Positions 1,917 to 30,700 of a DNA stretch of 64,000 bases are shown piece by piece. The notes beneath the pieces were generated by a model. That model worked only from the letters and a program-made list of their open reading frames with translations. It was not told the DNA's origin and searched no databases. This stretch comes from Bugula neritina. Lineage: Eukaryota > Animalia > Bryozoa. The stretch lies in contig OZ037765.1 of NCBI GenBank assembly GCA_964035545.1, positions 3,534,001 through 3,598,000 of the forward strand, written 5' to 3'. The position numbers and the translations under genes were made by a program. Position 1 is the stretch's first letter, and every line of letters starts with the position of its first letter.

Positions 1917-4567
1917 TTTACAGTTAGAGTAATTATAATTAAATATTGCTTCGTAGATTATATTGTAGCATATATTATACTGCATTACAGAATAAAATAA
2001 TCATAATAACTTGACTTAAGATCATGCACAGTGTTTCATAATACACTTAAACTATTATATTGTTACTTACTAATGTGATGTGTGCCTAAATGAATGCCTA
2101 ATTTGAACATTTTGTATGTTATTTTTACAAAAACAATGACAATCCAGAATTGCTGCTAATTATGAATAAAGTCATTTATTTAATCATAACTTTTCTCATA
2201 AAACGTTTTTTGTGATCCGATGCCAAAAAGTATCAGTTTATATAATACATCACATAATTTATATCATACAGCTCATTGTGTGGTAATTTGTATATTAAAT
2301 AAATAAAACTATATACACACATACGGCATGCAATCATAATAAAATTAGGCTGCTCTATTGTATAATATTTTATGTCCATAAAAACAATTTGCTACGAACA
2401 AAAAGATTGAGAATGCTACAATTAGCATAAAAGTGTTGGAAAATAGGCTGCTAGTTTGATATCAAAACGTTGCATATACTGTCAGCATTTCACAAATTCT
2501 TTAACATATTCTAAAGTATAAACTTTAGCAGCATTCAATTTAATTTAATCATAAATTTATTCTATTGACAAATTTAGGAGTTGTTCTCTATATTTGTTGC
2601 TACCAACTATTATAATATCTGGTTACTATAATATTATAATTATTGTAGGGTGCTAATAATTATTGTAATACAACATGTTACTACTAGCTATAACTATATA
2701 TTATACTATATTATATGTTACTACTAACTACTATATGGTATATATCATACTATATTATGCGTTATAAAGCACGATGGACTAAACAAGTGGTAGGTAAATA
2801 GTTTTATGGCTCGGTGAGTCATATTTTGTTTCCTCTCTATTTTAAAACAGCATTTTCATATTTATGGCATGTTATATAGTATATAAATTGTATCTCTTCA
2901 CCCTCAATTGCTGCTGTTATTCCATGTTAAACACAGTAGATATATTAACAACACATTATGCTAACAGCCAAAGTAATTAACTTTAGTTTAAAGTCCGTGT
3001 GACCTAGTTTATGATAGCTGTACTGTGCATCACCAGTTATGTATTTTGTGGTTAAAATTGCCAGCATAATTGAAGTAATGAAATTATAACTAAAACTAGT
3101 TTGCTAACAATGAAAAACGGAGCAATAATACATACTCAGTGTGTATCATATTATGAAAGTTTGTCAATTAAAAAGCAGTAAAAAGCTAACTGTAAAAAAG
3201 CAGAAAACCTACATATATTATACCTACAAAGCCATGGTAAATGCTAAATCATAAGAATAAGCTCACTAAATTTGTGCTGTGTATTGTATATAATTCTGGA
3301 GAAAAGAGGTTTATTCAGTCATCAAATAGAAGTCTTTTAGGTGTGGCAGCGGAGAAGTTTCATTAGTCTAAGTTCTATAAGCTTTTTATATATATCTTGA
3401 TTCTCATGAGAACATAACTTCCTTTGCTACATTTTCCATCGAGAACACAAGCTTTTCGGAAATCCATTACATGCACCTTTACGTCCTAGCTCTTGTTTAT
3501 ATCATCATTCTTTATACATAGTATATTAATATATTATGAGGCTTATGAACTATTCTGAGAATATTTATAATATAAATGGGTAACCTTATAAACTGATACT
3601 ACATTCTCACATATTATAATACTCTGACTGGAAGCTACATAGAACTGCAGTATCTGAATGGAGGTAGGAGAGTTTATATTTACTTTTACTAGTTGCCATT
3701 CTATCCATATAAAGTAGCAAATGGTATAACACGCTCAATATACTTGATGTTGTTATAAAGTAACTATGCAAGAGTTGAGACAACCCACAACGCTCCACAT
3801 ATACTTACAACTCTTTAATGGATAAGAAAATTCTCAAAGAGTGCAGTTATGAAGATTTTATACTATATATTCGGTAGCAATCAAGTTAGCTGATGCATAC
3901 AGCACTGTGACTCTTATTTTTAAGATTGTAAATACTATATCACAGCTACAAAAATAATATCATATGACATTCACTTATTTTTTATAAATATCACTATGCT
4001 CTCTATATCGGAGCATAACTACATTTATTACTCATCATTGCACATCTGTTCACATAATGATGCTGGTACCCACAATAAGCCACACATTGTTGGAATATTA
4101 TCTATAAACTAAAGCATTGAATGATACTAACGAGTAGGCTATACATCATACTAAATTTAATAACCACTAGAAACAAATTTGAGCATAAAACCATATATCT
4201 TGACGAAAGCTGTCACGTGATCATGTAAACATTTTATTCATTATAGTCACGGCACAACTAGCACACTGTAGGGTTTGTTGCTTGACATCATGCAATAAGA
4301 GAAGCCACCTGTCTCTTACTGGACATAGTAAAAAGATAATTGAGCTAGTTTATAAAGAATTCTGTGTACCATATGCTGGTGGTGCAGAACTACACACCTC
4401 ACCTGGTCAGGTAACTTCATGGCAAGTAAGATTTATTATGAAAAGTGTTACCTACTAACAAGCCTAATTCTCGGTAGGCTGTACAATGAAGTAATAATAT
4501 GTAGTTTTCTGTGTTAGAATTATAAATATCTTAATTATGGTGTCCAGTTATTTTTCTGGTTGCGGTT

Positions 4568-4575
4568 TATATAAA
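4568..4575 (+). promoter_or_regulatory. Probable TATA box of the Roco-caspase gene
   Basis: TATATAAA ~45 bp upstream of ATG 4615, which opens an 18-codon exon ending in a G|GTGAGG donor. Confidence 0.4.
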
Positions 4576-4614
4576 CAGCCAGTCCTGTATTCTTACTCTG
4601 TTGGTGAGGAAGAA

Positions 4615-7600
4615 ATGGAAACCTGGACTTTTAAAATTACTCCCTTATTGCACCTAGATGAAGAAATGGTGAGGCAAATAATTAATTGAAACTATTTCAG
4701 TACTGATTAGCAGCCTACTAGAAATGTAGTATTTAAAGCCATTAATAAGTTTTACATTTAGGTGCAAGAGTGGAGAAATTTTAATAGTTTAAGTTCTTTG
4801 ATTTTGGAACAAAATAACATAAGTCTTTTGCTCCATTTCTAATCTAGAACACAGCTTTTTTCAAATCTTTAACACATACTGCACCAACCTAAGTTTTCTG
4901 AGTAGGCTAAAGAAGTAAAAGGAATTTTACTGTGGCACGGGAGCAAATATGATTGGATGCCCTTCCTGACATCATCAACGGTTCCGCTGGGATTCGAACC
5001 GTGACTATTTTGAACAATAGGCCAGTGTTCTAATGTTACAAATCGAGGCTTATCCTTGAAATTGTCCTGATTTAATCATAATTAAAATGGTATGAGGTGT
5101 GAGGCAACAGGACACTGGCAAATTAACATACATGTAGAGTGCAGCAAGTATAAGTTACAGCAACAGCACCAGCCCATAATTTCGCAGTGGATCAGCATAA
5201 TTTTCATGTTGCTAAAATATATATAGGAGAGCCTTTCTGTATCACCTTGTGCATTGAATGGATTCGGGTGGGATGCTGGAATTACATTTAATGAAAACTT
5301 ATTCTTCTTATGGTTATAATTTCATTTGATTGACACTATTTTCATGCTTAGAATAAAAAAGTCTATTTCCCTGATCAAAGCGTGGGAATGTTGTAGTATA
5401 TTATGTATATGTCACAACCATATAGTAATTTATATAGACATCATTTCATTGTTATCATGTAGACATGGTCTACGACTCTACGAACAGGGCAAGTTTTACT
5501 TGATGTGTTCTCTAAAAGTGTTGGAAGGCCATGGTTTGGGGATATATTGTAGAATTAATGCATACCAGCAGGCTAATATAGGTTTAATTATATTATTATG
5601 ACTCAAGATATTCTGCTTACAGATGAAAGTAAAGGCTAGTGAACACAACTACAGCCTGTAACCAGTGACTACAAGATGGGGCAATGTACCTCTACACCTA
5701 AAAGTGAATCAAGTTAGTAAATAATCTAATTACAGATACTGCAGAATATGGAGCATTGCTAGTTGTATTGTATTATATTATATTATATAATAGTAAATTG
5801 TGTTTAGTATATTATAGTTATTATATTATACTTGTATTATATTGTATTGCATTGAATTATTTTGCTGCCCCTACTATATTATAATACAAACTCTGTTTGA
5901 CCACCATATTATAATTATTATGCTAACTTGTGTGTATATCACATGGGTTTATAGTCATCATTTCTGTGTAAGCCCCTGATGGAAAAGAACTTTTTAAGTT
6001 AGCTATGAACTTGTTTTTATTGTGGCAATGATTGGGTGCCCTTCCTAACATCCCCCTTTGGGTGTAGAACCACTGACCTTGTGGTTACTAAGCTATTGCT
6101 TTAACCATTAGACCACAGCTGTTCCCTTATACCACTATTACGTCTTATAAAAAACAGCAGTGTATTTAAATTAGATATAATCATTATTTATATGGTATTC
6201 TGCTTAAAAACTAGTTTGATAAACTGAATAAAACTTAGAAACGCATTTAGAATGTATCACAGAATTTTAATTTGTTCAACAGTATTTGTGAATATTTACA
6301 ATATAAAACTATGCTGTTTGCGTAACTTTTAGAGACGTATTACAATGCATGGTTCAACAGATCCAGTATAGATAGAGATGATGAATGGATGATGAATAAG
6401 ACTAAATCCTACACTATAGAAGAGATCAATGCTAAAAGTAGACATCATAAAGTTACTCATGCTATACTGAAGTATGACATTCCTCCAGATATTGGCACAC
6501 TGTTACCTCACCTCACCCATCTAAAGCTGTATGAAGTAGGCAGAATAGCTGATTGGGTCAGGTATGGTATTGTTATAAAGTTGTATTCATAGTGACCTAT
6601 TAGTTTGTAGTTAGTGTAGGGGTAACACTGCCCCTACCCGTACTAACATAAAATTGGGCTGCTGGATTTCAGGCACTCAAAATGCCGAATGAATATGGTA
6701 GCAATCCAATTGGCCAATTGATATTTAGCGAGCTCACTTTTCATGTTTCAATTTTCAATTTTCCAATTGCAACTTCACATTAGTAAGAGCACCTAGTGAT
6801 AATTTACAATTCAATACTTTTTATCAGGCAGTAAATTAATTGGCCACTTGAGTTTTGCCACGGCTGGCAATGTATTGTGCGTGGGTAATTCCTGCAGTGG
6901 GTTCCCCCTGGCATGTACTCGAGTTTCAAATTCGGAATTTCCCATTATGTGATTCCAAGCTTATAGTTAAAATATGAAGTAATCTCCCGTATAATAATAC
7001 TAGCTTTAGTAACAACTGTTATATGGGTTTATCTGACTTATAATTGCGTATCAATTTATAATTCAATCTAAAGTTAAGTAATCTCATTCAAGAGTAATAA
7101 TATGCAGTAGTTAAATTGAAATATAACTATGTTTTTTACAGCATATCTTCACTGAAGAATCTTGAGATATTGAATATATCATGGAACAACCTATCTGAAG
7201 GTCTACCAGACAATATGTTCACATCCTTACTATCCTTGAAAAGTTTGAGCATGGTGAACTGTAAACTGCCAACTCTACCCAACAGGTAAGGGTATAATCA
7301 CATATATATTATTTTAAAGTAGGGTTAGCTTAGACTTTACCAACATCACTATAAAATTTCATATAGCATAATTGTTATATTATAGTCAAAGTGTTCTAAG
7401 CAGTACATGTGTACTTATTATTAAGGTGGATGACAATTATCAAAACTTTGTCATCAGTAGAAGGGAATTTTATGTGATGTTCAATGACTTGTATGCTGTA
7501 TTGATATTTATACTGAAATATTTTACGGCATTTTATACCTGTGTGTTATGTTACAGCATAGCTTCACTCAAGAATCTTGAGGTATTGAATATATCAGGGA

Positions 7601-10600
7601 ATAGAATCTCTGGTTTACCTGACAATATACTCTCATCCTTACCATTACTGAAAGAGCTGTACATGTCAAACTGTGCACTAGTGACTCTACCAAACAGGTG
7701 TGTGTTGTATTGTATTATCGGTGATACTTTATTAAATAAAAATTATAATTATATCCTTAATACAGATTTGTTGTAGCTTGCAATATATTTGTATAGACTT
7801 GAAGTAATGTATGCTTTACACAACATTTGCATGTTGCATCAAAAATTATATTCATATAAACTAATATTATATACATAGTTTTATTTCTGTGTGTTATGTT
7901 ACAGCATGTCTTTACTGAAGAATCTTGAGGTATTGATCATGTCGGAGAATAGCTTTTCTGAAGGTCTGCCTGAAGATATATTCTCATCCTTACGGTCTTT
8001 AAGAGTGTTGTCCATGCGTTACTGCGATCTATCAACTCTACCAGACAGGTGTGTGTTATATATTTTAGAGTTGTCTGCACTTTAATGAGTCAACTTAACT
8101 TTTTATAAGAACACTACTCTAGTTCAACTAATATGGTTAGGGTATTCACTTTTAGGGTCATTGCTACAAGTAAGTGATGAGTCGTAAAGTTAATAAAAGT
8201 TGTAACATGAAACTCAGTAATAAATGTACTCAGAAAGTAATGTTACAATGAATTGCCATTTATTACTCTAATGAATTCATATCTTTAATAAACTAGTATC
8301 TAATAAATGCCAGTGCTTGACCAATAAAATCCAGTTCCACTATTACTACTGTGTTTGGCATTTTAGCACTTATAAGCTCCACAGTACTCAACATCTGGGA
8401 GATAACTCCTATTTTATACTATATGTTGCACATACATGCGCTGTAAGAGTGTAATGTAAGATATGATGGCATTTTATTATAATCTGTTTGTGTATGAAGC
8501 AGTGTTCAAGACAGCATATTCACATTTTATATTTGTTAGCATGCAGAGTCTACAGAAGTTAGAGAAATTGAAAATATCCTCAAATAACTTCACCAGTTTA
8601 CCACTTCCGGTGTACACATTGAGTAGTCTGCAGGAACTGGATATATCTGAGAATATTTATCTAACATCCTTTGATCCTAAGATATTACAGTTGACTCATC
8701 TCCATACACTGAATGCTGAAGGTTGCCTTGCTCTTATATCTCCTCCACCTGAAGTATATCAGAGAGGCATAGGTTCGGTTGAACAGTACTACACAGACTT
8801 GGCTGAAGGAGCTGGTAACAACCTGCCATTTGCTACCATAGCTGTGCTAGGTAATACCATGGCTGGAAAAACTAGCTTAATCAAAACATTACAAAATGCT
8901 GACAGAAAGCGAGTTCTGACCGACAGAAGTCCAGATGCTGTGAGAGATGAGACAACAAAGGTGTTTAATCTTGAAGAGGTTGAGGTAGATGGTACAGTAC
9001 TCCGTCTTATCGATTTTGGAGGTCAAGAAGTTTATCACATTACTTATCAACTGACATTGCGCCAAAATTGCCTACCCGTAATAGTAGTCAACATGGAACA
9101 GTATAGCAAAATTTCAAAAGAATCAACACACAGAGAAGCTGTTAGAAGATTAGCCTTTGATTACATGTCTCACCTCTACCTCGCCAACCCAACTCTGGGA
9201 GCACCAAAACTCATTTTTACCCACAAAGACAAGTTTCAAACTACAGAATTTCAAAAGCTTCGAAAAGTTTTCCTGGAAACTTCAAACCAGCTGTGTGAAC
9301 AAATTATTCGAGAAGAAAAAGCATTGGGTGGAGAATTTGCTCAAATTAAACATTTTAATAAATCAGTTAAAGAAGTCTTTCTTCATGGCGACATATACGA
9401 AGTAGGAAGCAATGATAAGTATGAAGTGTTCGACATAGTTAAAAACTCTCTCCTTCAAAGCAGTCAAAACTTTGTGAAACTTTTACCTCTGGTCTGGGAG
9501 GAAGTGAATGAAAAAGTTCTGTCATTTCAATCTGTGTACATCACCTTTGATGAGGTACTGAAAGAGGTACAAACGGAATTTCGACACATTGAGGCAAGCC
9601 AGCTGAACATAATCCTCACATACATGCATGACTGCGGCAAAGTCTTGTGGTATAAAGATATCGGCTCTCTTCGGCCATACATATTCCACAGGATTTCAGA
9701 AGTTACCAAACTTCTATGTGTCTTGTATCATCATGATTCTAACATATGGCAAAGTAGAGTTGATTTGTTTGAGCCATACCTTTCCAAGGATGGAACCCCT
9801 GTTGAAAAAGAAGACTTTGAGAGGTTTGTGAGTCACTTCACCAACACAGGTTTGATGCTGCAATGTCTTCTCACTCATCTGATTAAAAATGAAACATCAT
9901 TTGACGGTGTCAAAAATGAAGAGGTTGCGCTATGCTTGCTTCACACATTCCGTTTGTTATATGGTCCTTTACCTAGTGATTTCAAGGAACCTTGCTTTAT
10001 TGTTCCCCAGTTTGCTAACGATTTCTTCAATACTTCTTACTCATCCCCAAAAAACATGCTTCTTCAAGTTGAAGTGCAATTCAACGGCTTAACTCTACCG
10101 CAATACGTTTACCATCAAATGAATGTTGGCTTGTTAGAACTCTTTCCTGATGGGTTTGCTGTTGTTAAAGTAAAGAAAAATGGAGCAAATGTTTATCAAG
10201 ATGGAATCTACACACAGCTTGTGCATGACTGTAAATCTAGAAAAGTGTTACTCCACGTGTCATCTAATGCTGCTAACATCTACAGCATGTGGCAAAGACT
10301 CATCACAGTCATCAATAACATCCTTAGACATGTTCTGCAAACTTGGACAGCATGTAGACCTGTCACTACATGTTACTGCGCTCACTGCCTTCTGCTGGGA
10401 CTTCCTTGTCCAAAAAAGGTGCTCAATCCTCAGTGGTGTATCCGATCCTTGAAACATCCTACACCAAATATCAAGCTGTGTAATGGATCTTCAACAACTT
10501 TGTGCGATGACGAGGAGATGCCCAGTGCTTTTCTGCATCCATGTATGTGTAAATAAATTATTTCTTTGTATTTTGGCTCCTCAACTTTTATGATTTAAAT

Positions 10601-13600
10601 TATCAAATCTAAAAATATTTTATACATGGTAAATGACAGCGTTTTACTCACCAGGTGGCCCTCTGTCTACAGAAGAAGCTGATACAATTAAAGAATGTGT
10701 CAATAAGTTGAGGTCTGCTAAAGAACAGGCCACCTTGACTGCCTCTGGTAAGATCAGTTTCCTTATCATAAACTCGTAGCTGTTGGCAGCATATTTATAT
10801 GTAAACAACAGGAGACAAAGAGCCCAGGTGATCAGTTGGATACTCTACTCTTTTGCAGAAATTTACCATTTCAATTTATTTGTGTCTCTATTAACCAGAA
10901 CACTACAGGTCCAGAAAAATTAGTTTTCGCAAGTTCTTCTAGCCTACAGTCATCCTGATACTTAGTGACGAAATGCAGTACCATATAATATGTTATTTAT
11001 TTTTGAAGCACCCAGAGACAAGAGTCTGCACACTCAGACTATCTCGACCCCTTTTGAAGACGATAACATCAGTGAATGCTCTGATGTCGAAGAGGAAGGA
11101 TTTGCTGATTTCACTGAAGATGACCTTGAACCTTTTTTATTTAACATTGATGGTATGCAGCTGAAACCTACAGAAAATGAAAAAGTTAAACACCTGTTTC
11201 ACAGTCACCATAAGGTAAAACAAATGGATATCTTTTAACGCAATAAGCAATTTTTGGTAATGTTTTGGCTGATTATTTAATTTTGATTGACTTTCAAGTT
11301 AATTTTATTTACCAACTTTTAGTTAAAGAAATTTGAATAATTTACAGGTTTATAAGATGAGTGACCCTGTTAGAGGTCGTGCCATGATTATCAATAATGA
11401 AAGATTTTTTCTGGATGATGGGAGGGAGCTGACTAAGGCAACTCGACATGGTTCATACATCGACTATGTTAACATCAAAACTCTGCTAAAAGACATGGGA
11501 TTTGTTGTAGCCGGTGAAGATGAGCCTCTGTTTGACTTGAGTAAACAGGTTTCTGAATAAATTTTTTATTTCTTATGCAACAAAGGGTGCTAGCTTCAAG
11601 ATGTTTACACAAATCGCTAATGTATAATAATTAATTAATTTACAGTTTTTATTAGTATTTAGTTTGTTCAGCTATAACAAATTCTGGAGTTGTCACTAGT
11701 CAAATAGAAGATAACTGTATATTTGCATGAAACAAAGAAGCCCTACCGGTGTCAGTTGTTTTGTCTAATAATTCTGTCAGAAATCTTAGTTTCTGTTGGT
11801 TTTCGTTTCGGTTCCAAACTGCCAGTTGTACTTAACAGGCTGGCGTTAGTCTCTGTAATAGTGAAATTTTTAAGCTTTTCATTTGCTAAAATCAGTTGTT
11901 GTGCTTTGCTAAATACTTCATTTACTGCACAGTATCTTTTACAACCCAATATGTATATGTTGATTCAACAGGAAATCATGTCAGAAGTGAAAAAGGAGAC
12001 CACCCGCAAAGACCACCAGCACCTAGGCATGTTTATTCTAGTCATCATGTCACATGGAACCTCTGGAAACATTTTCTATGACAGAGATTGTAAACCTGTC
12101 TTCTTGTCGGAAGTTAGAGACTTGCTCTCAGCTAGCAAATTTCCTGCCATGAGAGGAAAACCCAAACTCATCATATTCCACGCTTGTTCTGGCAGTGAGT
12201 AACACAGATTCATGACTCATGTTACTAAAATTAGCAAATTAAGCTACATTGATCTATATAGCAATAACATCGGTTGTTGACTTCATAAAGTTAATATATT
12301 ATGTTATCTTATATTAGTCTTTTTAAAGTACTTGAATCAGTTAAACTACAATCAAATTTTCACACTAAATCAGAACATTTTTAGGCGTTTTGATTATCGA
12401 TATTATTGAATACAGAAGTAGGCTACACTTCATAATTATATTATTTCTTCTATTTCTAAGTTTGTTTTATAACTCTAAATTACTTAGTAGTGCTGCGTGA
12501 TCTTTTTTCTCATTGTGATTCCAGTCCTAAGTATTCTCATTATGCATCTTATAGCAGGGTCTGCTGTAGGTGATAAGATTTTCGATGAAAAAATCAGACA
12601 TTATTGTTGATCATGCAAGTAAAATGGTAGATATGAACTGTTGAAAATATTGCATTTTTACTTTATCTCACAGGTAGAGCTGACTCTGGTAATGTTATGC
12701 AGTCACAAAACCCTGTCAACTTCTCACCACCAACATCTCCAGCAGAAGCAGGGAGTGAGTCTTCTGTAAGTCAAACTGCGTCTTCAAACATTCCCTTTGA
12801 TAAATTCGCTCACTTGGACGCTGATGACTTCTACATTGTAAAGCCAAGCACAGAAAGTTAGTGTGAAATACATTATATATCTGAATAGACTCAACATCCT
12901 ATTTTAACTAAAACAGTTCACAATTTTTAATCAGTCAGACTTTAGGTATAACTGAAGCACTCACGTGTTACTAGTAACTCCGCCATGTGTTACAGCTTAC
13001 AAGGCTGGTAGAAATGAGAATTATGGTACCTGGTTTATCAGGATACTGGTGGCTACATTCTACAGACACAGCTGTCACAGGGATGTTAGTGAGCTGTTTA
13101 GAATAGTGAGTATTACTTGAAATCTGCGTTATTATACTTGATTAGCCATTATATGGCTGTGACAATTAATGCTAGGAAAATCCAGTGGTATTAAATAGCC
13201 AATATATAGTAAAGGTAGTTTTATAGGCACCAGAGAAACTATCAATTATAGAGTAACACATCATCTTTTGTGTATATAAAGTTAGTAACCTATTATTACA
13301 CAATCTTTTTGCCAGTTATTCTTTCAGTAACTTTAATAGAAAACCTTGTAGAATAACAAAAAATATTAAATACTTAAAAATTAATGTAGTAAATTTCATT
13401 ATTTATATTAATTACATGTAAATTGCTATATATTATTATGAAATACTGAGGAGTTAGTTTTATATTTTATTCGTTGTTTCCCAAATCTACCCTGCAGATA
13501 CAAGACAGAGTTAGAAGAGTCAGTATTGCTTATTGTAAGAAAACAGGAGACGAAACAGCTGGTGGGAATGTACCTAATTGTCAGGAATGTACTTTCACCC

Positions 13601-13656
13601 ACCTCAGAAAGCTTTTCTTTTTTCCAAAGTTTCATGGCAGACAACTCCCGCAGTGA
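4615..13656 (+). CDS. LRR-Roc-COR-caspase fusion protein (Roco protein with a C-terminal peptidase C14 domain), 13 exons, ~1295 aa
   Basis: Exons 4615-4668 (tentative), 6335-6561, 7142-7285, 7557-7697, 7905-8048, 8540-10542, 10655-10747, 11009-11214, 11348-11548, 11972-12194, 12674-12856, 12996-13105, 13498-13656. All introns are GT-AG, phases match and the sum is 3888 nt. About 10 LRRs; pre-Roc PPPEV..G motif; Roc G1 GNTMAGKTS, G3 DFGGQ, G4 THKD; COR (YMHDCGKVLWY, FIVP); caspase YKM...RGRAMIINN, TRHGS, IMSHG, RGKPKLIIFHACSG, DF, GTWFI, KLFFFP. Exon structure 5' of 6335 is uncertain. Confidence 0.88.
4930..5033 (-). mobile_element. tRNA-derived SINE fragment, copy 1
   Basis: The minus strand has a B-box GGTTCGAATCCC followed by GTCAGGAAGGGCATCCAATC, shared with the copy at 6020-6121. 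Confidence 0.55.
6020..6121 (-). mobile_element. tRNA-derived SINE fragment, copy 2
   Basis: Minus strand: A-box TGGTCTAATGG, B-box-like GGTTCTACACC, then GTTAGGAAGGGCACCCAATCATTGCCACA, homologous to 4930-5033. Confidence 0.6.
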
Positions 13657-15790
13657 CTGCGGTCTGCAGCACTTCACTTGCAGCAGAAACAGACCTGCCA
13701 TGTGCACTTGCCCCTCATAGACAGACCTATCATATAAGTCTTTGGTTTTATACAACTAGTTTCTAATTTTGTTAATCAATATAATATTGTGCCTGTTCTG
13801 GTAATTTGAGCGAAAATATGAATATTTTTATTTGTTAAGTTGGCTCGAAGGCTAAAAAATATAATATTTTTATGTCTTTATATATTTTATTTTAGTTTGA
13901 ATAATTGTAAAGGCAATTTTATACAGTAGGTATATAGTGGTTTGTTTACATTATAAAAGATGATTAGGGAAGTTGGTTAGCTACTCAGATTTTTTTTCCA
14001 TCAAAGCATTTTATGTCTCGTCTTGAAATTTGCCAAAACTCCATTCACCCACAAGTAACTTAGTTTTGCTAATAGGACAATCTCAAAGTGACCTAAATGA
14101 TATATGTTGTAGTTATTGCTAGAATTAAAGTCTAGTACACGATTATTTGGTTTGGCAATTATTCAGCTTTTAACAAATGATAAAACTAGCTTGTTTATGT
14201 TATTCCTTAGTAAAAATTACATCTATGATAATACAGCCATGTACAGAAATCTGTGTGTTATAGATAGAAATGTGGGTATTGTAATTTTCACTTTTAATTG
14301 TTTTTTTATACTGCAGGGCCTATTTATTATATGAGAATAATCATAATTTTTTTATTCTGAATGTATAAATCGTCTCTGTACAACTATAGGCAAGCTGCTG
14401 GAAAAGTTTCTTGAAAAGATTATAATTACCCCAATATTTAATCAAAGTGCGGTCAACTTGATGAGTCAAGATATATCACTATCCCTTTAACCTTTTGAAT
14501 TAGCATTGTATTTTGTTTACGCTAGTAGCTGGTGATGAGCACTGTCACATGAAGTTACTGCAGCACTTAGCAGCTAATATGCATGCCACAAACTATTTGC
14601 ATGTTCGACAATAGCTGTGATTTGTGAGTCTAAATCTTCCAGCTTGGCAAAAACATGCTCTGGTGGGGCTATTTCACTGGAGCGCTTCACCTAAATTCGT
14701 AGTTGTCTGCTCTATCATCACTAGGTTATAAGTTATATAAATTCAATTTACTAGTATCAAGCGAAATTCAAGGCTGAAATGAAATTGAGCTGAAGCACGA
14801 GAGGTGCGTCACTCATTTGAAAAAATAAAGGTGTAAGTACCAGTCTAACGTTATTAAAGGTCAAGGTTAGTAACAATGTAAACTACAAGTAAACGTGAAT
14901 TTTCTTTTAATCAGTTGATTGAATACAGTAATAATATCAACCTATTGGTGTTATTAGTTGCTTTTAGTTAACTATATTCACCTTTTGATCTGAATTAATG
15001 CTAATACTAATAGTATTACTAATAGTCTGATTAAAGCTATTCCTATCTGTATGATTATGAGTATGACTCAGTATCGAAGTCAAACTATCAAAATGAAAAT
15101 GAATATCATAAATTTAAAATTAAATAATAATTAATAATATTAATTAGATATTCATATTGAATTTAATAGAAAGTAATAAATTTATTAAAAGTTAAATTAT
15201 TATATTCATATTGATAATGATAATCTATTTTATAACGATAATTATTATCATGATTAATAGGATAATCATTAATTCATTAGGAGTTATGATTTAACAATAA
15301 TTTTACGATGATAAAACAATTGTAGCCGTAACACTGACTTTGACTGTGAGCGTGCAGGCCTGTCCTTTTAACAGTGAGTGCAACTAATTGTAAAACTAAG
15401 CGTAACTGTCTGTAAGTGTAAGATCTAAGTTGTTCATCTTTATATTGAGTTTGACATTGGCATTACTTATAGTTATTCATATTCATATTGGTGATTACTA
15501 TCACTAATACTATTACTATCAGTATCAGACCTCACAGTCTGGTAGTGATAGTATTAGTCCTAATCATAATGATAAATGTTTGTGATAGCCAATAGGCAAT
15601 GGGCGAATATCAAAGATAAATCATGAAATATAATTATAGTTATTCACTGGTAACAAAGGTTTTACAGTTACTACTGAATTCAAAGTCATAAAATACCCCT
15701 TTAGCCTGATTTTTTTCTCAATTTACCTGTTACTGCACCTACCTTAAAACATTAAACTTTGTATTTATTTTCAGTTGGAGTGTCGTATTG

Positions 15791-27700: not shown

Positions 27701-30700
27701 CTCCAATCAATTTTATTTTATTTTTTGTTTTTCCGACATTTTGGATAATAAAGACACTTTCTATCAGAAAATAGTGACCCACACTAGTGAACACACTGCC
27801 TGCTGTCAGGAAACGAATGTCTAGCAAAGCTGTCAGCGAGTCTCACCTGTTGCTGTCGGAGACGTTTGAAGAGGGCAGCTGGGTTGGACCACCAACATTG
27901 CTGATGTCCATGCCAAACTTCTCAAAAGTAAAGTTTGCATTCGTCACTTGTCCAGAGTTGGCGTCTGCATTGAACAGCTTCTCGTAGTTGACTGATGACT
28001 CATCGCTGTGAGAGCCGACACGACTCATCTTCCGAGGTGACTCGTCGTAATCCCGCTCGCTCTACAACCACCAACAAGACAGCTAGAGTCAGACTGCCAG
28101 CTCCACAGCAGGTCTGTGGCCATGAGGAAGCTAGCTAGACATGAATACGTTACCCAGAGGCCGTGACCTCTCAACAACTTACAATAAACATCTGATCATC
28201 CTTTATATTAATCCTCTGCGAAGGCTCGAGCAAAGCTGAAATGGTAACGGCATCAAAGTCGGCCGCCATCACCGGTCTGGATGGTGAACTTACAAATGCT
28301 ATATCGTCGCCCAACATAGACAAGTCATTCTGCAGTGCAAGGGTGTCTAAAATTTATTTAGCAAACAAAATAACGAGTGGCACCTATTTTCTTTCTCAAT
28401 TTCTGGTAGTCGTGTTGTTGACAGTAGACAGGCATGTAGAACTAGACTCTAGAGCCTTGTGGCTAGAAAACATGGGTCTACATATTTCAACAGTTAATCA
28501 TGTTGTTTTCAAACAGAGGCTATCAAAATAACTTTGTTTTGAAGGATAGAGAGTTGCAGTAGAGCTAAAGTGATGGGATACCATGGCAATGGAACTGGCT
28601 GAGATGTGTAACAACTGAATAACCAGAAAGTAACACCACTTTACTTTAATCCTCCCCCTTCCCCTACGTTCCTTTCTAGCCTACATGCCTGAACACCCCC
28701 TCCGCTGAGTGCAGACAGAGACACCAACAAGACGACTGGTTTGGGCTGTGTATGTCAAGGACAAAGAGAAATATACTCACCAGCATCCATCTCCGTGAAT
28801 GCCATGACACTGGCGTCATCGATCAGGTCTGGAGGATTGTTCCTGTAGTTCGAGGAAGCCGGGATGGTGTTGGTTGGTCGGTACTGCGCTGCCGTCACAC
28901 TCGCTTCGGTCACTCGGATAAAGTTCTGCTGAAAGTGAGGCTGACTGGCTTGTATATCGTGGCCGAGGTTGGAGAGCTGACCGGGGCTATAGTGATGGAC
29001 TAGCGGCAGCGAAGACGTGGTAATGAGAGACTGGGTGGAGGTGGGAGCCTGGGAAGGCAGGTGTGGCTGCTCATCCATAGCGTGTATCTGCTGGAGGTGA
29101 CTAACCGGCTGCTCTTTGTTCGTCTGGTGATGAGACATGGTGTCCTGGTGAAGGGCGACATTGTGCTGAGTCACAGGCGAACCCGAGTGCTGCCCGTGCT
29201 GCTGCTGCCCGTGCTGCTGCTGTCCGTGTTGCTGCTGTCCGTGTTGCTGCTGTCCGTGTTGCTGCTGTCCGTGTTGCTGCTGTCCGTGTTGCTGCTGTCC
29301 GTGTTGCTGCTGTCCGTGTTGCTGCTGCCCGTGCTGCTCAAAGTGATTGTGTAACTGCTGACCTTCAAGATCCAGCCTCGGCATCGCTGCCTGCATGTTC
29401 AGCGAAGAACTCGGCAGCACCTGACTGTCCAACTGACGCTGAGAGTCAATTTGATGCGGCGAGACGGGAACCTGAGACTGAAACATATAGACGTTCTGCT
29501 GCTCCTGGTGCGGACTGTGCTGTTGGTGGGGACCCTGTAGCTGGAGAGGGGTCTGCTGAGAGTGGGGGCTGTGCAGTTGGCCGGAGGTTTCCGGTTGCTG
29601 ACGGAATAGCGGCTGCAGCTGGATGTCATGACGGATACTGGAACCCTGTGGAATGCTGTGGTTGTGTTGGAAGTGTGGGTGGATGCCAGACTCCCCCTGC
29701 TGCTCCTCGCCCAAGATCTGGCAAATCTGCTCCAGCGAGGAGGCATCAGCTGCCTGTACATCTACTTTCCTCATGCCTCTCGCTGAATCCAGTAACTTCA
29801 TGTCTGAAAAAATAACAAATTTATATAACTAGCTTGTATTACAGAGACTACTAGCTTGTATTACACAGACTACTAACTTGTATTATAGAGACTACTAACT
29901 TGTATTACACAGACTACTAGCTTGTATTATAGAGACTACTAACTTGTATTACAGAGACTACTAGCTTGTATTACAGAGACTACTAACTTGTATTACAGAG
30001 ACTACTAACTTGTATTACAGAGACTACTAGCTTGTATTACACAGACTACTAACTTGTATTACAGAGACTACTAACTTGTATTATAGAGACTACTAACTTG
30101 TATTATAGAGACTACTAGCTTGTATTACAGAGACTACTAACTTGTATTACACAGACTACTAGCTTGTATTACAGAGACTACTAGCTTGTATTACAGAGAC
30201 TATTAGCTTGTATTACACAGACTACTAGCTTGTATTACAGAGACTACTAGCTTGTATTACACAGACTACTAACTTGTATTACAGAGACTACTAGCTTGTA
30301 TTACAGAGACTACTAGCTTGTATTACACAGACTACTAACTTGTATTACAGAGACTACCAGCTTGTATTACAGAGACTACTAACTTGTATTACAGAGACTA
30401 CTAACTTGTATTACACAGACTACTAGCTTGTATTACAGAGACTACTAGCTTGTATTACAGAGACTACTAACTTGTATTATAGAGACTACTAACTTGTATT
30501 ACAGAGACTACTAGCTTGTATTACAGAGACTACTAGCTTGTATTACAGAGACTACTAGCTTGTATTACACAGACTACTAACTTGTATTACAGAGACTACC
30601 AGCTTGTATTACAGAGACTACTAACTTGTATTACAGAGACTACTAACTTGTATTACAGAGACTACTAGCTTGTATTATAGAGACTACTAGCTTGTATTAC

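What the first reader, a model, noticed from the sequence alone, without database searches (positions are those of the whole stretch)
4615..13656. Single-chain LRR-Roc-COR-caspase: candidate all-in-one immune or cell-death receptor
Seen: the ORF track shows the Roco and caspase pieces separately, but two short linker exons (10655-10747, 11009-11214) join them in frame with matching phases (1,1,0). The result is one ~1295-aa protein with ~10 LRRs, a Roc GTPase with intact G1/G3/G4 motifs, COR, a Cys cluster, an acidic linker and complete caspase large and small subunits. Established: the familiar animal Roco proteins (LRRK1/2, DAPK1, MFHAS1) carry kinase or death domains or no enzyme effector. 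Roc-COR modules dimerise in a nucleotide-regulated way, and initiator caspases are activated by induced dimerisation on separate platforms (apoptosome, PIDDosome, inflammasome). Inference: LRR ligand sensing controls Roc-COR dimerisation, which directly activates the fused caspase. This would be a GTPase-based analogue of an NLR-adaptor-caspase pathway in one gene. I know of no characterised animal protein with this architecture, but I cannot search.
Basis: partly seen in the sequence, partly recalled or inferred. Interest (0 to 1): 0.93.

Follow-up and report, generated by a model that had tools for sequence, protein, structure and literature searches.

The report
Bryozoan Roco GTPase fused to caspase
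This moss-animal gene really does join a leucine-rich-repeat sensor, an LRRK2-like GTPase switch and a cell-death protease in one protein; it belongs to a large untested family whose design was glimpsed before in amphioxus, an annelid and bacteria, and whose protease part has been exchanged between copies.

Summary
Confirmed. Exons 6333/6335-13656 splice in frame (GT-AG) into about 10 LRRs, Roc, COR, a Cys cluster, an acidic linker and a full caspase. RNA contigs from three studies cover exons, not introns. They show joints 10542/10655, 11214/11348, 12856/12996 and 13105/13498, but match at only 92-97%, so they may be alleles or paralogs. The host is probably Bugula neritina.

Corrections: the proposed first exon (4615-4668) is doubtful. 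The catalytic motif is HACSG, not QACxG (His-Cys dyad and both S1 arginines kept). The model Roco monomerises on GTP, so the switch direction is unknown.

Not unique: Watersipora and Bugula database models and at least 12 Branchiostoma clusters share the architecture. Papers noted amphioxus 'LRRs-caspase', an Owenia ROC-caspase and bacterial LRR-Roc-COR-caspase; none was tested. This scan already holds 44 findings on this family in this genome.

New here: Bugula paralogs carry two caspase cassettes (43-48% alike) whose history conflicts with their Roc-COR (AU p<0.001), with the break at intron 6. LRR cassette exons vary in number. Best reading: a modular one-chain danger or pathogen sensor with a caspase output (0.6).

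The parts
4615..4668 (+).
4419..4425 (+). Alternative tiny phase-1 first coding exon (M-A-), like the M-A-E exon candidate in paralog L028 and the short start of Bugula model KAF6038145; a guess, no RNA test
6333..6561 (+).
7142..7285 (+). LRR cassette exon, 144 nt, phase 2-2, two LRRs
7557..7697 (+). LRR cassette exon, 141 nt, phase 2-2, two LRRs
7905..8048 (+). LRR cassette exon, 144 nt, phase 2-2, two LRRs; RNA-covered
8540..10542 (+). Large exon 6: three LRRs, Roc GTPase (G1 8850-8876, G3 9012-9023, G4 9219-9230), COR-A/B, Cys cluster (CAHC 10377-10388)
10543..10654 (+). Intron 6 (phase 1), holds the in-frame TAA; similarity to type-B paralogs stops at its donor
10655..10747 (+). Linker exon 7 (helical), phase 1-1
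11009..11214 (+). Linker exon 8 (acidic, Asp-rich), phase 1-0
11348..11548 (+). Caspase large subunit, first exon; Arg179-equivalent at 11444-11446
11972..12194 (+). Caspase large subunit, catalytic exon: His 12053-12055, motif HACSG (His for Gln283 at 12179-12181, Cys 12185-12187)
12674..12856 (+). Intersubunit linker with candidate Asp cleavage sites and start of small subunit
12996..13105 (+). Small subunit exon; Arg341-equivalent at 13010-13012
13498..13656 (+). Last coding exon of small subunit with TGA stop

Best explanation
A member of an expanded bryozoan family of cytosolic one-chain sensors. Shown: one spliced gene encodes LRRs, Roc-COR and a caspase with an intact His-Cys dyad; LRR cassette number and exposed residues vary between paralogs; caspase cassettes have been exchanged between Roc-COR backbones. 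Inferred: the LRRs, or a guarded host factor, sense a foreign or damage cue; this shifts the Roc nucleotide state and with it the monomer-dimer balance of Roc-COR; the tethered initiator-type caspase domains are brought together or released, cut their own linker and cleave targets for cell death or an immune signal. If it behaves like CtRoco, the caspase-on dimer would be the GDP or empty state, or the dimer restrains the caspases until GTP frees them.
For: Gene and splicing. Roco fold; caspase fold in the Watersipora homolog joined by a disordered linker. Conserved GTPase motifs across 19 paralogs. His-Cys and both S1 arginines kept in bryozoan and amphioxus copies. Expansion: at least 28 distinct JGI clusters at 44-83% identity; all 7 Bugula loci read have caspase exons downstream. 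LRR cassettes 3-6 per gene where the contig reaches them, with twice the amino-acid change at exposed positions (pN 0.37 against 0.19). Effector exchange. Amphioxus sister paralogs carry GT4, OTU or Death in the same slot, like bacterial LRR-AP-GTPase-COR conflict proteins.
Against: No ligand, substrate or activity is known. dN/dS at exposed LRR positions is about 0.8, so diversifying selection is not shown. GTP drives CtRoco to a monomer, the opposite of the simple model. About 100 residues of linker, much of it low-confidence in the homolog model, lie between COR and caspase and could uncouple them. His replaces the S1 Gln (for the role of Gln283). RNA matches are short contigs at 92-97%.
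Confidence: 0.6

Rival explanations
1. A self/non-self or developmental death switch rather than a pathogen sensor: it acts in colony allorecognition, polypide degeneration (brown-body formation) or symbiont control, with the same Roc-COR to caspase coupling.
For: Broad expression in RNA runs from three studies with no recorded challenge; lack of a clear positive-selection signal; bryozoan polypide cycling and the Bugula symbiont are from my own knowledge.
Against: Large paralog number, variable LRR cassettes and swapped effectors are the usual marks of conflict genes.
Confidence: 0.17
2. This copy's caspase is weak or non-proteolytic, or has altered P1 specificity, and acts as a scaffold, decoy or regulator (cFLIP-like) for active paralogs.
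For: Gln283 position is His in type A (this gene, L001, L031, L033) and Glu in type B, against Gln in Watersipora and amphioxus copies; one divergent Bugula model lacks a canonical P-loop.
Against: Catalytic His and Cys and both arginines are kept; the catalytic exon is 88-96% identical among type-A genes while their Roc-COR exons are 68-87% identical, which points to constraint (or to recent spread of the cassette).
Confidence: 0.15
3. Roc-COR works as a localisation or scaffolding module (membrane or organelle damage, as with LRRK2 and Rab partners), and caspase activation comes from local crowding, not from a nucleotide-gated dimer.
For: Long flexible linker; LRRK structures include Rab-bound monomers, dimers and tetramers; some Watersipora models begin with Met-Gly, a possible myristoylation start.
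Against: This gene's start is unknown; G1, G3 and G4 are conserved.
Confidence: 0.06
4. Two neighbouring genes (a Roco ending at TAA 10556 and a separate caspase) joined by prediction only.
For: No single read spans the gene; the 10747/11009 joint was not displayed; some Watersipora models end without a caspase.
Against: RNA joint 10542/10655 in two studies and 11214/11348 in three runs; same exon order in 7 Bugula loci and matching intron positions in Watersipora; annotated full-length models in two bryozoans.
Confidence: 0.02

Closest known systems
Amphioxus (Branchiostoma) LRR-Roc-COR-caspase models, probably the 'LRRs-caspase' hybrids of Zhang et al. 2008 (PMC2575513)
   Same: Same domain order; catalytic dyad intact; intron after COR and the five caspase introns fall at matching places; proposed as direct recognition-to-apoptosis links.
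   Different: About 23-28% identity over Roc-COR; QACRG motif; LRRs and Roc-COR on one exon in the gene read; the paper names no Roc or GTPase; that these are the same gene models is my inference. A common origin is neither shown nor rejected (AU p 0.10 for Roc-COR, 0.18 for caspase).
Owenia fusiformis caspase with ROC pro-domain (Horkan et al. 2024, PMC11463336)
   Same: Lophotrochozoan Roc plus caspase in one chain.
   Different: Single gene, LRR and COR not mentioned, no family, no function; I did not obtain its sequence.
Bacterial LRR-AP-GTPase(Roc)-COR-effector proteins (Kaur et al. 2021, PMC8195603)
   Same: Variable LRRs, Roc-COR, interchangeable C-terminal effector that can be a caspase; several paralogs per genome.
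   Different: Prokaryotic and predicted only; here the effector is an animal-type caspase with Arg-lined S1 and spliceosomal introns.
MFHAS1/MASL1, LRRK1/2 and CtRoco (Roco family)
   Same: LRR-Roc-COR core by Pfam and predicted fold; databases label the Watersipora homologs 'MFHAS1 homolog'.
   Different: No kinase or WD40; a caspase follows COR.
Brown algal LRR-ROCO genes (PMC11378527)
   Same: Phase-2 LRR cassette exons varying in number; proposed immune receptors; a small group has a C-terminal peptidase.
   Different: One LRR per 72-nt exon against two per 141-144-nt exon here; the algal peptidase is IPR009003 (trypsin-like clan, from my knowledge), not a caspase.
NLR inflammasome, apoptosome, PIDDosome
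   Same: Works-like analogy only: repeat sensor, nucleotide switch, proximity-activated caspase.
   Different: No STAND ATPase, no death-fold adaptor; caspase is covalently fused.

Membership tests
Roco proteins | Roc small-GTPase domain with G1, G3, G4 motifs | tested here: met
   Pfam Roc above cut-off; motifs located and conserved in paralogs
Roco proteins | COR domain directly after Roc | tested here: met
   Pfam COR-A weak (E 0.0015, below cut-off), but the predicted fold matches LRRK1, CtRoco and LRRK2 across Roc-COR
Roco proteins | GTP binding and hydrolysis with a nucleotide-dependent monomer-dimer cycle | not testable with these tools
   needs biochemistry
Caspases (C14A) | Caspase fold with large and small subunits | tested here: met
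   Pfam on exons 9 and 10; homolog covers 1-225 of the 233-position model and folds like caspases; exons 12-13 alone are too short for Pfam but align to the homolog at 52-67%
Caspases (C14A) | His-Cys catalytic dyad | tested here: met
   SHG and ACSG in exon 10
Caspases (C14A) | QACxG pentapeptide and S1 triad Arg179, Gln283, Arg341 | tested here: not met
   Both Arg kept, Gln replaced by His (HACSG); Watersipora relatives keep QACSG. It is a caspase-fold protease of the caspase lineage with a non-canonical motif; Asp specificity is not assured
Caspases (C14A) | Cleavage after Asp and activation by dimerisation | not testable with these tools
   needs enzyme assay
Metacaspases/paracaspases | Acidic S1 pocket (Asp for Gln283, Asp/Glu for Arg341) | tested here: not met
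   Arg179 and Arg341 equivalents present
NLR receptors | NACHT or NB-ARC STAND ATPase | tested here: not met
   no such Pfam hit; the NTPase is a Roc GTPase
LRRK/DAPK kinases | Protein kinase domain | tested here: not met
   none in the window exons or in full-length homologs
Amphioxus LRR-Roc-COR-caspases (as orthologues) | One clade with them in both Roc-COR and caspase trees | tested here: inconclusive
   best trees separate them; forcing them together is not rejected

The most novel reading that the evidence does not exclude
Bryozoans have built a large innate receptor repertoire from Roco GTPases: dozens of one-chain receptors assembled from variable LRR cassette exons, a Roc-COR switch and exchangeable caspase cassettes with different S1 pockets, in which the nucleotide state of Roc directly gates the protease. 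It would be an animal caspase-activation route that needs neither a STAND ATPase nor a death-fold adaptor, reached independently in amphioxus and bacteria.
Probability: 0.4. Interest if true: 0.85.

Novelty: new variant of a known kind. Interest (0 to 1): 0.62.

Why it matters
How the Roc-COR nucleotide cycle controls a C-terminal output is an open question for the whole Roco family, LRRK2 included. A natural fusion to a dimerisation-dependent protease gives a direct read-out of that cycle. For comparative immunology it points to a non-NLR route to caspase activation in a little-studied phylum, with modular swapping of sensor and effector parts. The architecture has been glimpsed in three papers but never tested, and I found no paper on the bryozoan expansion (most subscription journals were not searchable).

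Tried and rejected
Exon 1 at 4615-4668: no paralog match, wrong phase, on an inverted repeat; a short-exon scan gave several candidates, none proven. Positive selection on exposed LRR residues: dN 0.50 against dS 0.63, not above 1, and the exons are not independent. Repeated caspase swapping: the unrooted type-A/type-B split is not rejected in the Roc-COR tree (AU p 0.12, 0.28); only the rooted test is decisive, so one exchange is enough. A first clade test had L033 in the wrong group and was discarded. Single or separate origin with amphioxus: inconclusive. Caspase subtype: the PDB sequence search is dominated by caspase-3 entries and no reference set was available, so initiator type rests on the long pro-region and my recollection of caspase-2 intron positions. 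The JGI metagenome locus scan returned mostly short contigs of other hosts. The bacterial promoter scan is irrelevant for an animal gene. A paper search for Peptidase_C14 with Roc, COR and LRR found nothing; Huang et al. 2008 on amphioxus immunity was not held. ESM Atlas gave only leads under 0.9 for an unassigned Roc-caspase.
Full report
Observation. The region 4000-14500 was read and exon boundaries were set from the sequence and corrected in scripts. The order is an N-cap with one degenerate LRR, three phase 2-2 cassette exons of two LRRs each, a 2003-nt exon with three LRRs, Roc, COR and a Cys cluster, two linker exons (phases 1,1,0), and five caspase exons. Pfam supports LRR, Roc, weak COR-A and Peptidase_C14. 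A predicted structure of the large exon (pLDDT 82) matches LRRK1, C. tepidum Roco and LRRK2 along its length. As the operators asked, database searches were made exon by exon by reference; the joined model was not sent to any search or folding tool and was built only inside scripts to check the frame and locate motifs.

Transcripts. Thirteen RNA-like runs from four studies hold small shares of the stretch. Four were laid on 7800-13750 at 85% likeness. Depth is near zero in introns. GT-AG joints appear at 10542/10655 (two studies), 11214/11348 (three runs), 12856/12996 and 13105/13498, and one contig runs through exons 10, 11 and 12. The 10747/11009 joint was not among the rows shown, but paralog contigs join the same two exons directly. 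The TAA at 10554-10556 is intronic in these transcripts; a minor unspliced form cannot be excluded. Limits: these are short contigs, the best are 92-97% alike, most are from paralogs, and none spans the gene.

The start is probably wrong. It has no counterpart in paralog loci and lies on an arm of a 46-nt inverted repeat. A Bugula database model starts only a few residues before the exon-2 segment, L028 has a candidate three-codon first exon, and the window has a similar candidate at 4419-4425. This is a guess.

Host and family. The closest hits are at least 28 JGI clusters at 44-83% identity; those fetched lie on contigs named after AY690838, the Bugula neritina mitochondrial accession, and one JGI protein clusters with a B. 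neritina GenBank model. The window is therefore probably Bugula neritina or a close relative (inference). All seven Bugula loci read have caspase exons after the Roc-COR exon. Watersipora subatra has at least ten annotated models with a Roc-COR-like core and a caspase domain, with introns at the same places as here; B. neritina KAF6038145 is a divergent full-length example. Branchiostoma species have at least 12 clusters with LRR, Roc, COR and caspase, and sister paralogs with GT4, OTU or Death in the same slot. Other Roc-caspase proteins without LRRs occur in amphioxus and unassigned assemblies. Earlier notes of this scan report 50-109 such genes in this genome; I did not count them myself.

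The caspase. His and Cys are intact, and the equivalents of Arg179 and Arg341 are present. The third S1 residue, Gln283 (PMC2064784), is His: the motif is HACSG. This is shared by L001, L031 and L033 (type A), while L002, L027, L028 and L032 have E-x-CSG (type B), Watersipora mostly QACSG and amphioxus QACRG. The pocket is not the acidic one of metacaspases. Asp specificity is likely but unproven. The Watersipora homolog folds as Roc-COR plus a caspase domain joined by a low-confidence linker.

Module exchange. Type A and B catalytic exons are only 42-48% identical, yet L027 (type B) has a Roc-COR exon 75-79% identical to type-A genes and 51% to type-B L002. DNA similarity between the window and L027, L032 or L028 stops at the donor of intron 6, whereas it continues through the caspase exons with type-A genes. 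Type B is one clade in the caspase tree (100/100), but that clade is rejected in the rooted Roc-COR tree under two models (AU p 0.00016 and 0.0006). At least one replacement of the linker-plus-caspase cassette, or conversion of the Roc-COR exon, is needed. Repeated swapping is not shown, and the JGI contigs are short-read assemblies. A word search of the scan's notes found no mention of this.

The LRRs. Cassette exons number 3 here and 4, 5 and 6 in L028, L027 and L031. Predicted exposed positions change twice as much as the rest (pN 0.37 against 0.19), but dN/dS is about 0.8. This resembles the phase-2 LRR exons of brown algal ROCO genes (PMC11378527).

Mechanism. Shown: architecture, splicing, conserved GTPase and protease residues, expansion, variable LRRs and cassette exchange. 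From established knowledge: initiator caspases are activated by induced proximity, and Roc-COR cycles between dimer and monomer. Inferred: a cue read by the LRRs changes the Roc state and so caspase proximity. The direction is open, because GTP-bound CtRoco is a monomer (PMC11052575). Either the GDP or empty dimer is the caspase-on state, or the dimer holds the caspases apart until GTP releases them. I give 0.6 to an immune or danger sensor with a caspase output, 0.17 to a developmental or allorecognition role, 0.15 to a weak or non-catalytic copy, 0.06 to a localisation-driven model and 0.02 to a prediction artefact.

Prior knowledge. Zhang et al. 2008 described amphioxus 'LRRs-caspase' proteins as direct links from recognition to apoptosis without naming Roc (PMC2575513); I could not match model ids. 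Horkan et al. 2024 reported one Owenia caspase with a ROC pro-domain (PMC11463336); bryozoans are not mentioned there. Kaur et al. 2021 list caspase among at least 24 effectors of bacterial LRR-AP-GTPase-COR proteins (PMC8195603). I found no paper on the bryozoan family and no experiment on any of them. One origin with amphioxus is undecided: best trees separate them and amphioxus caspase copies are interleaved with other effectors, but forced clades are not rejected, and the shared caspase introns may be ancestral to initiator caspases generally (my recollection of caspase-2).

Verdict. A real, expressed Roco-caspase fusion: a new variant of a known kind, untested, one of many copies. Interest 0.62.

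Noticed in passing
window:4620-4665 and 4750-4795: 46-nt inverted repeat, 76% complementary, overlapping the proposed first exon; may be a transposon remnant or local inversion.
   Followed up: partly
window:1662-1916 (+): C-type lectin domain exon just upstream of the Roco gene (Pfam Lectin_C).
   Followed up: partly
window:16549-16917 (+): Mpv17/PMP22 family exon.
   Followed up: partly
window:20138-20542 (-) and 28755-29801 (-): Rel-homology dimerisation domain exon and a Gln/His-rich repeat ORF, possibly one NFAT5-like gene (NFAT5 is my guess).
   Followed up: partly
window:53624-55307 (+): Exons that look like an ESRP/fusilli-type RNA-binding protein by eye; no Pfam hit on the single pieces.
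   Followed up: partly
window:59080-59772: Tandem 24-nt repeat giving open frames on both strands; probably a minisatellite.
   Followed up: no
P0296 (Bugula KAF6038145.1): Divergent LRR-Roco-caspase model with no canonical P-loop or DxGG motif and a QSCSG caspase motif; possible GTPase-dead family member.
   Followed up: partly
L026:6001-11043 (P0249) and P0252 cluster: Single-exon Roc plus caspase (QACRG) genes without LRRs in unassigned, eukaryote-like metagenome contigs; P0295 has Roc, a CARD-like stretch and caspase.
   Followed up: partly
Branchiostoma proteins P0184-P0224: One amphioxus Roco clade carries caspase, GT4 glycosyltransferase, OTU or Death after COR, interleaved on the tree, which suggests effector shuffling there too.
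   Followed up: partly
P0287, P0062 (Watersipora): N-termini begin Met-Gly with basic residues, a possible myristoylation signal.
   Followed up: no
window:10377-10500: CxHC plus further Cys after COR-B, invariant from bryozoan to amphioxus copies; possible zinc site.
   Followed up: no
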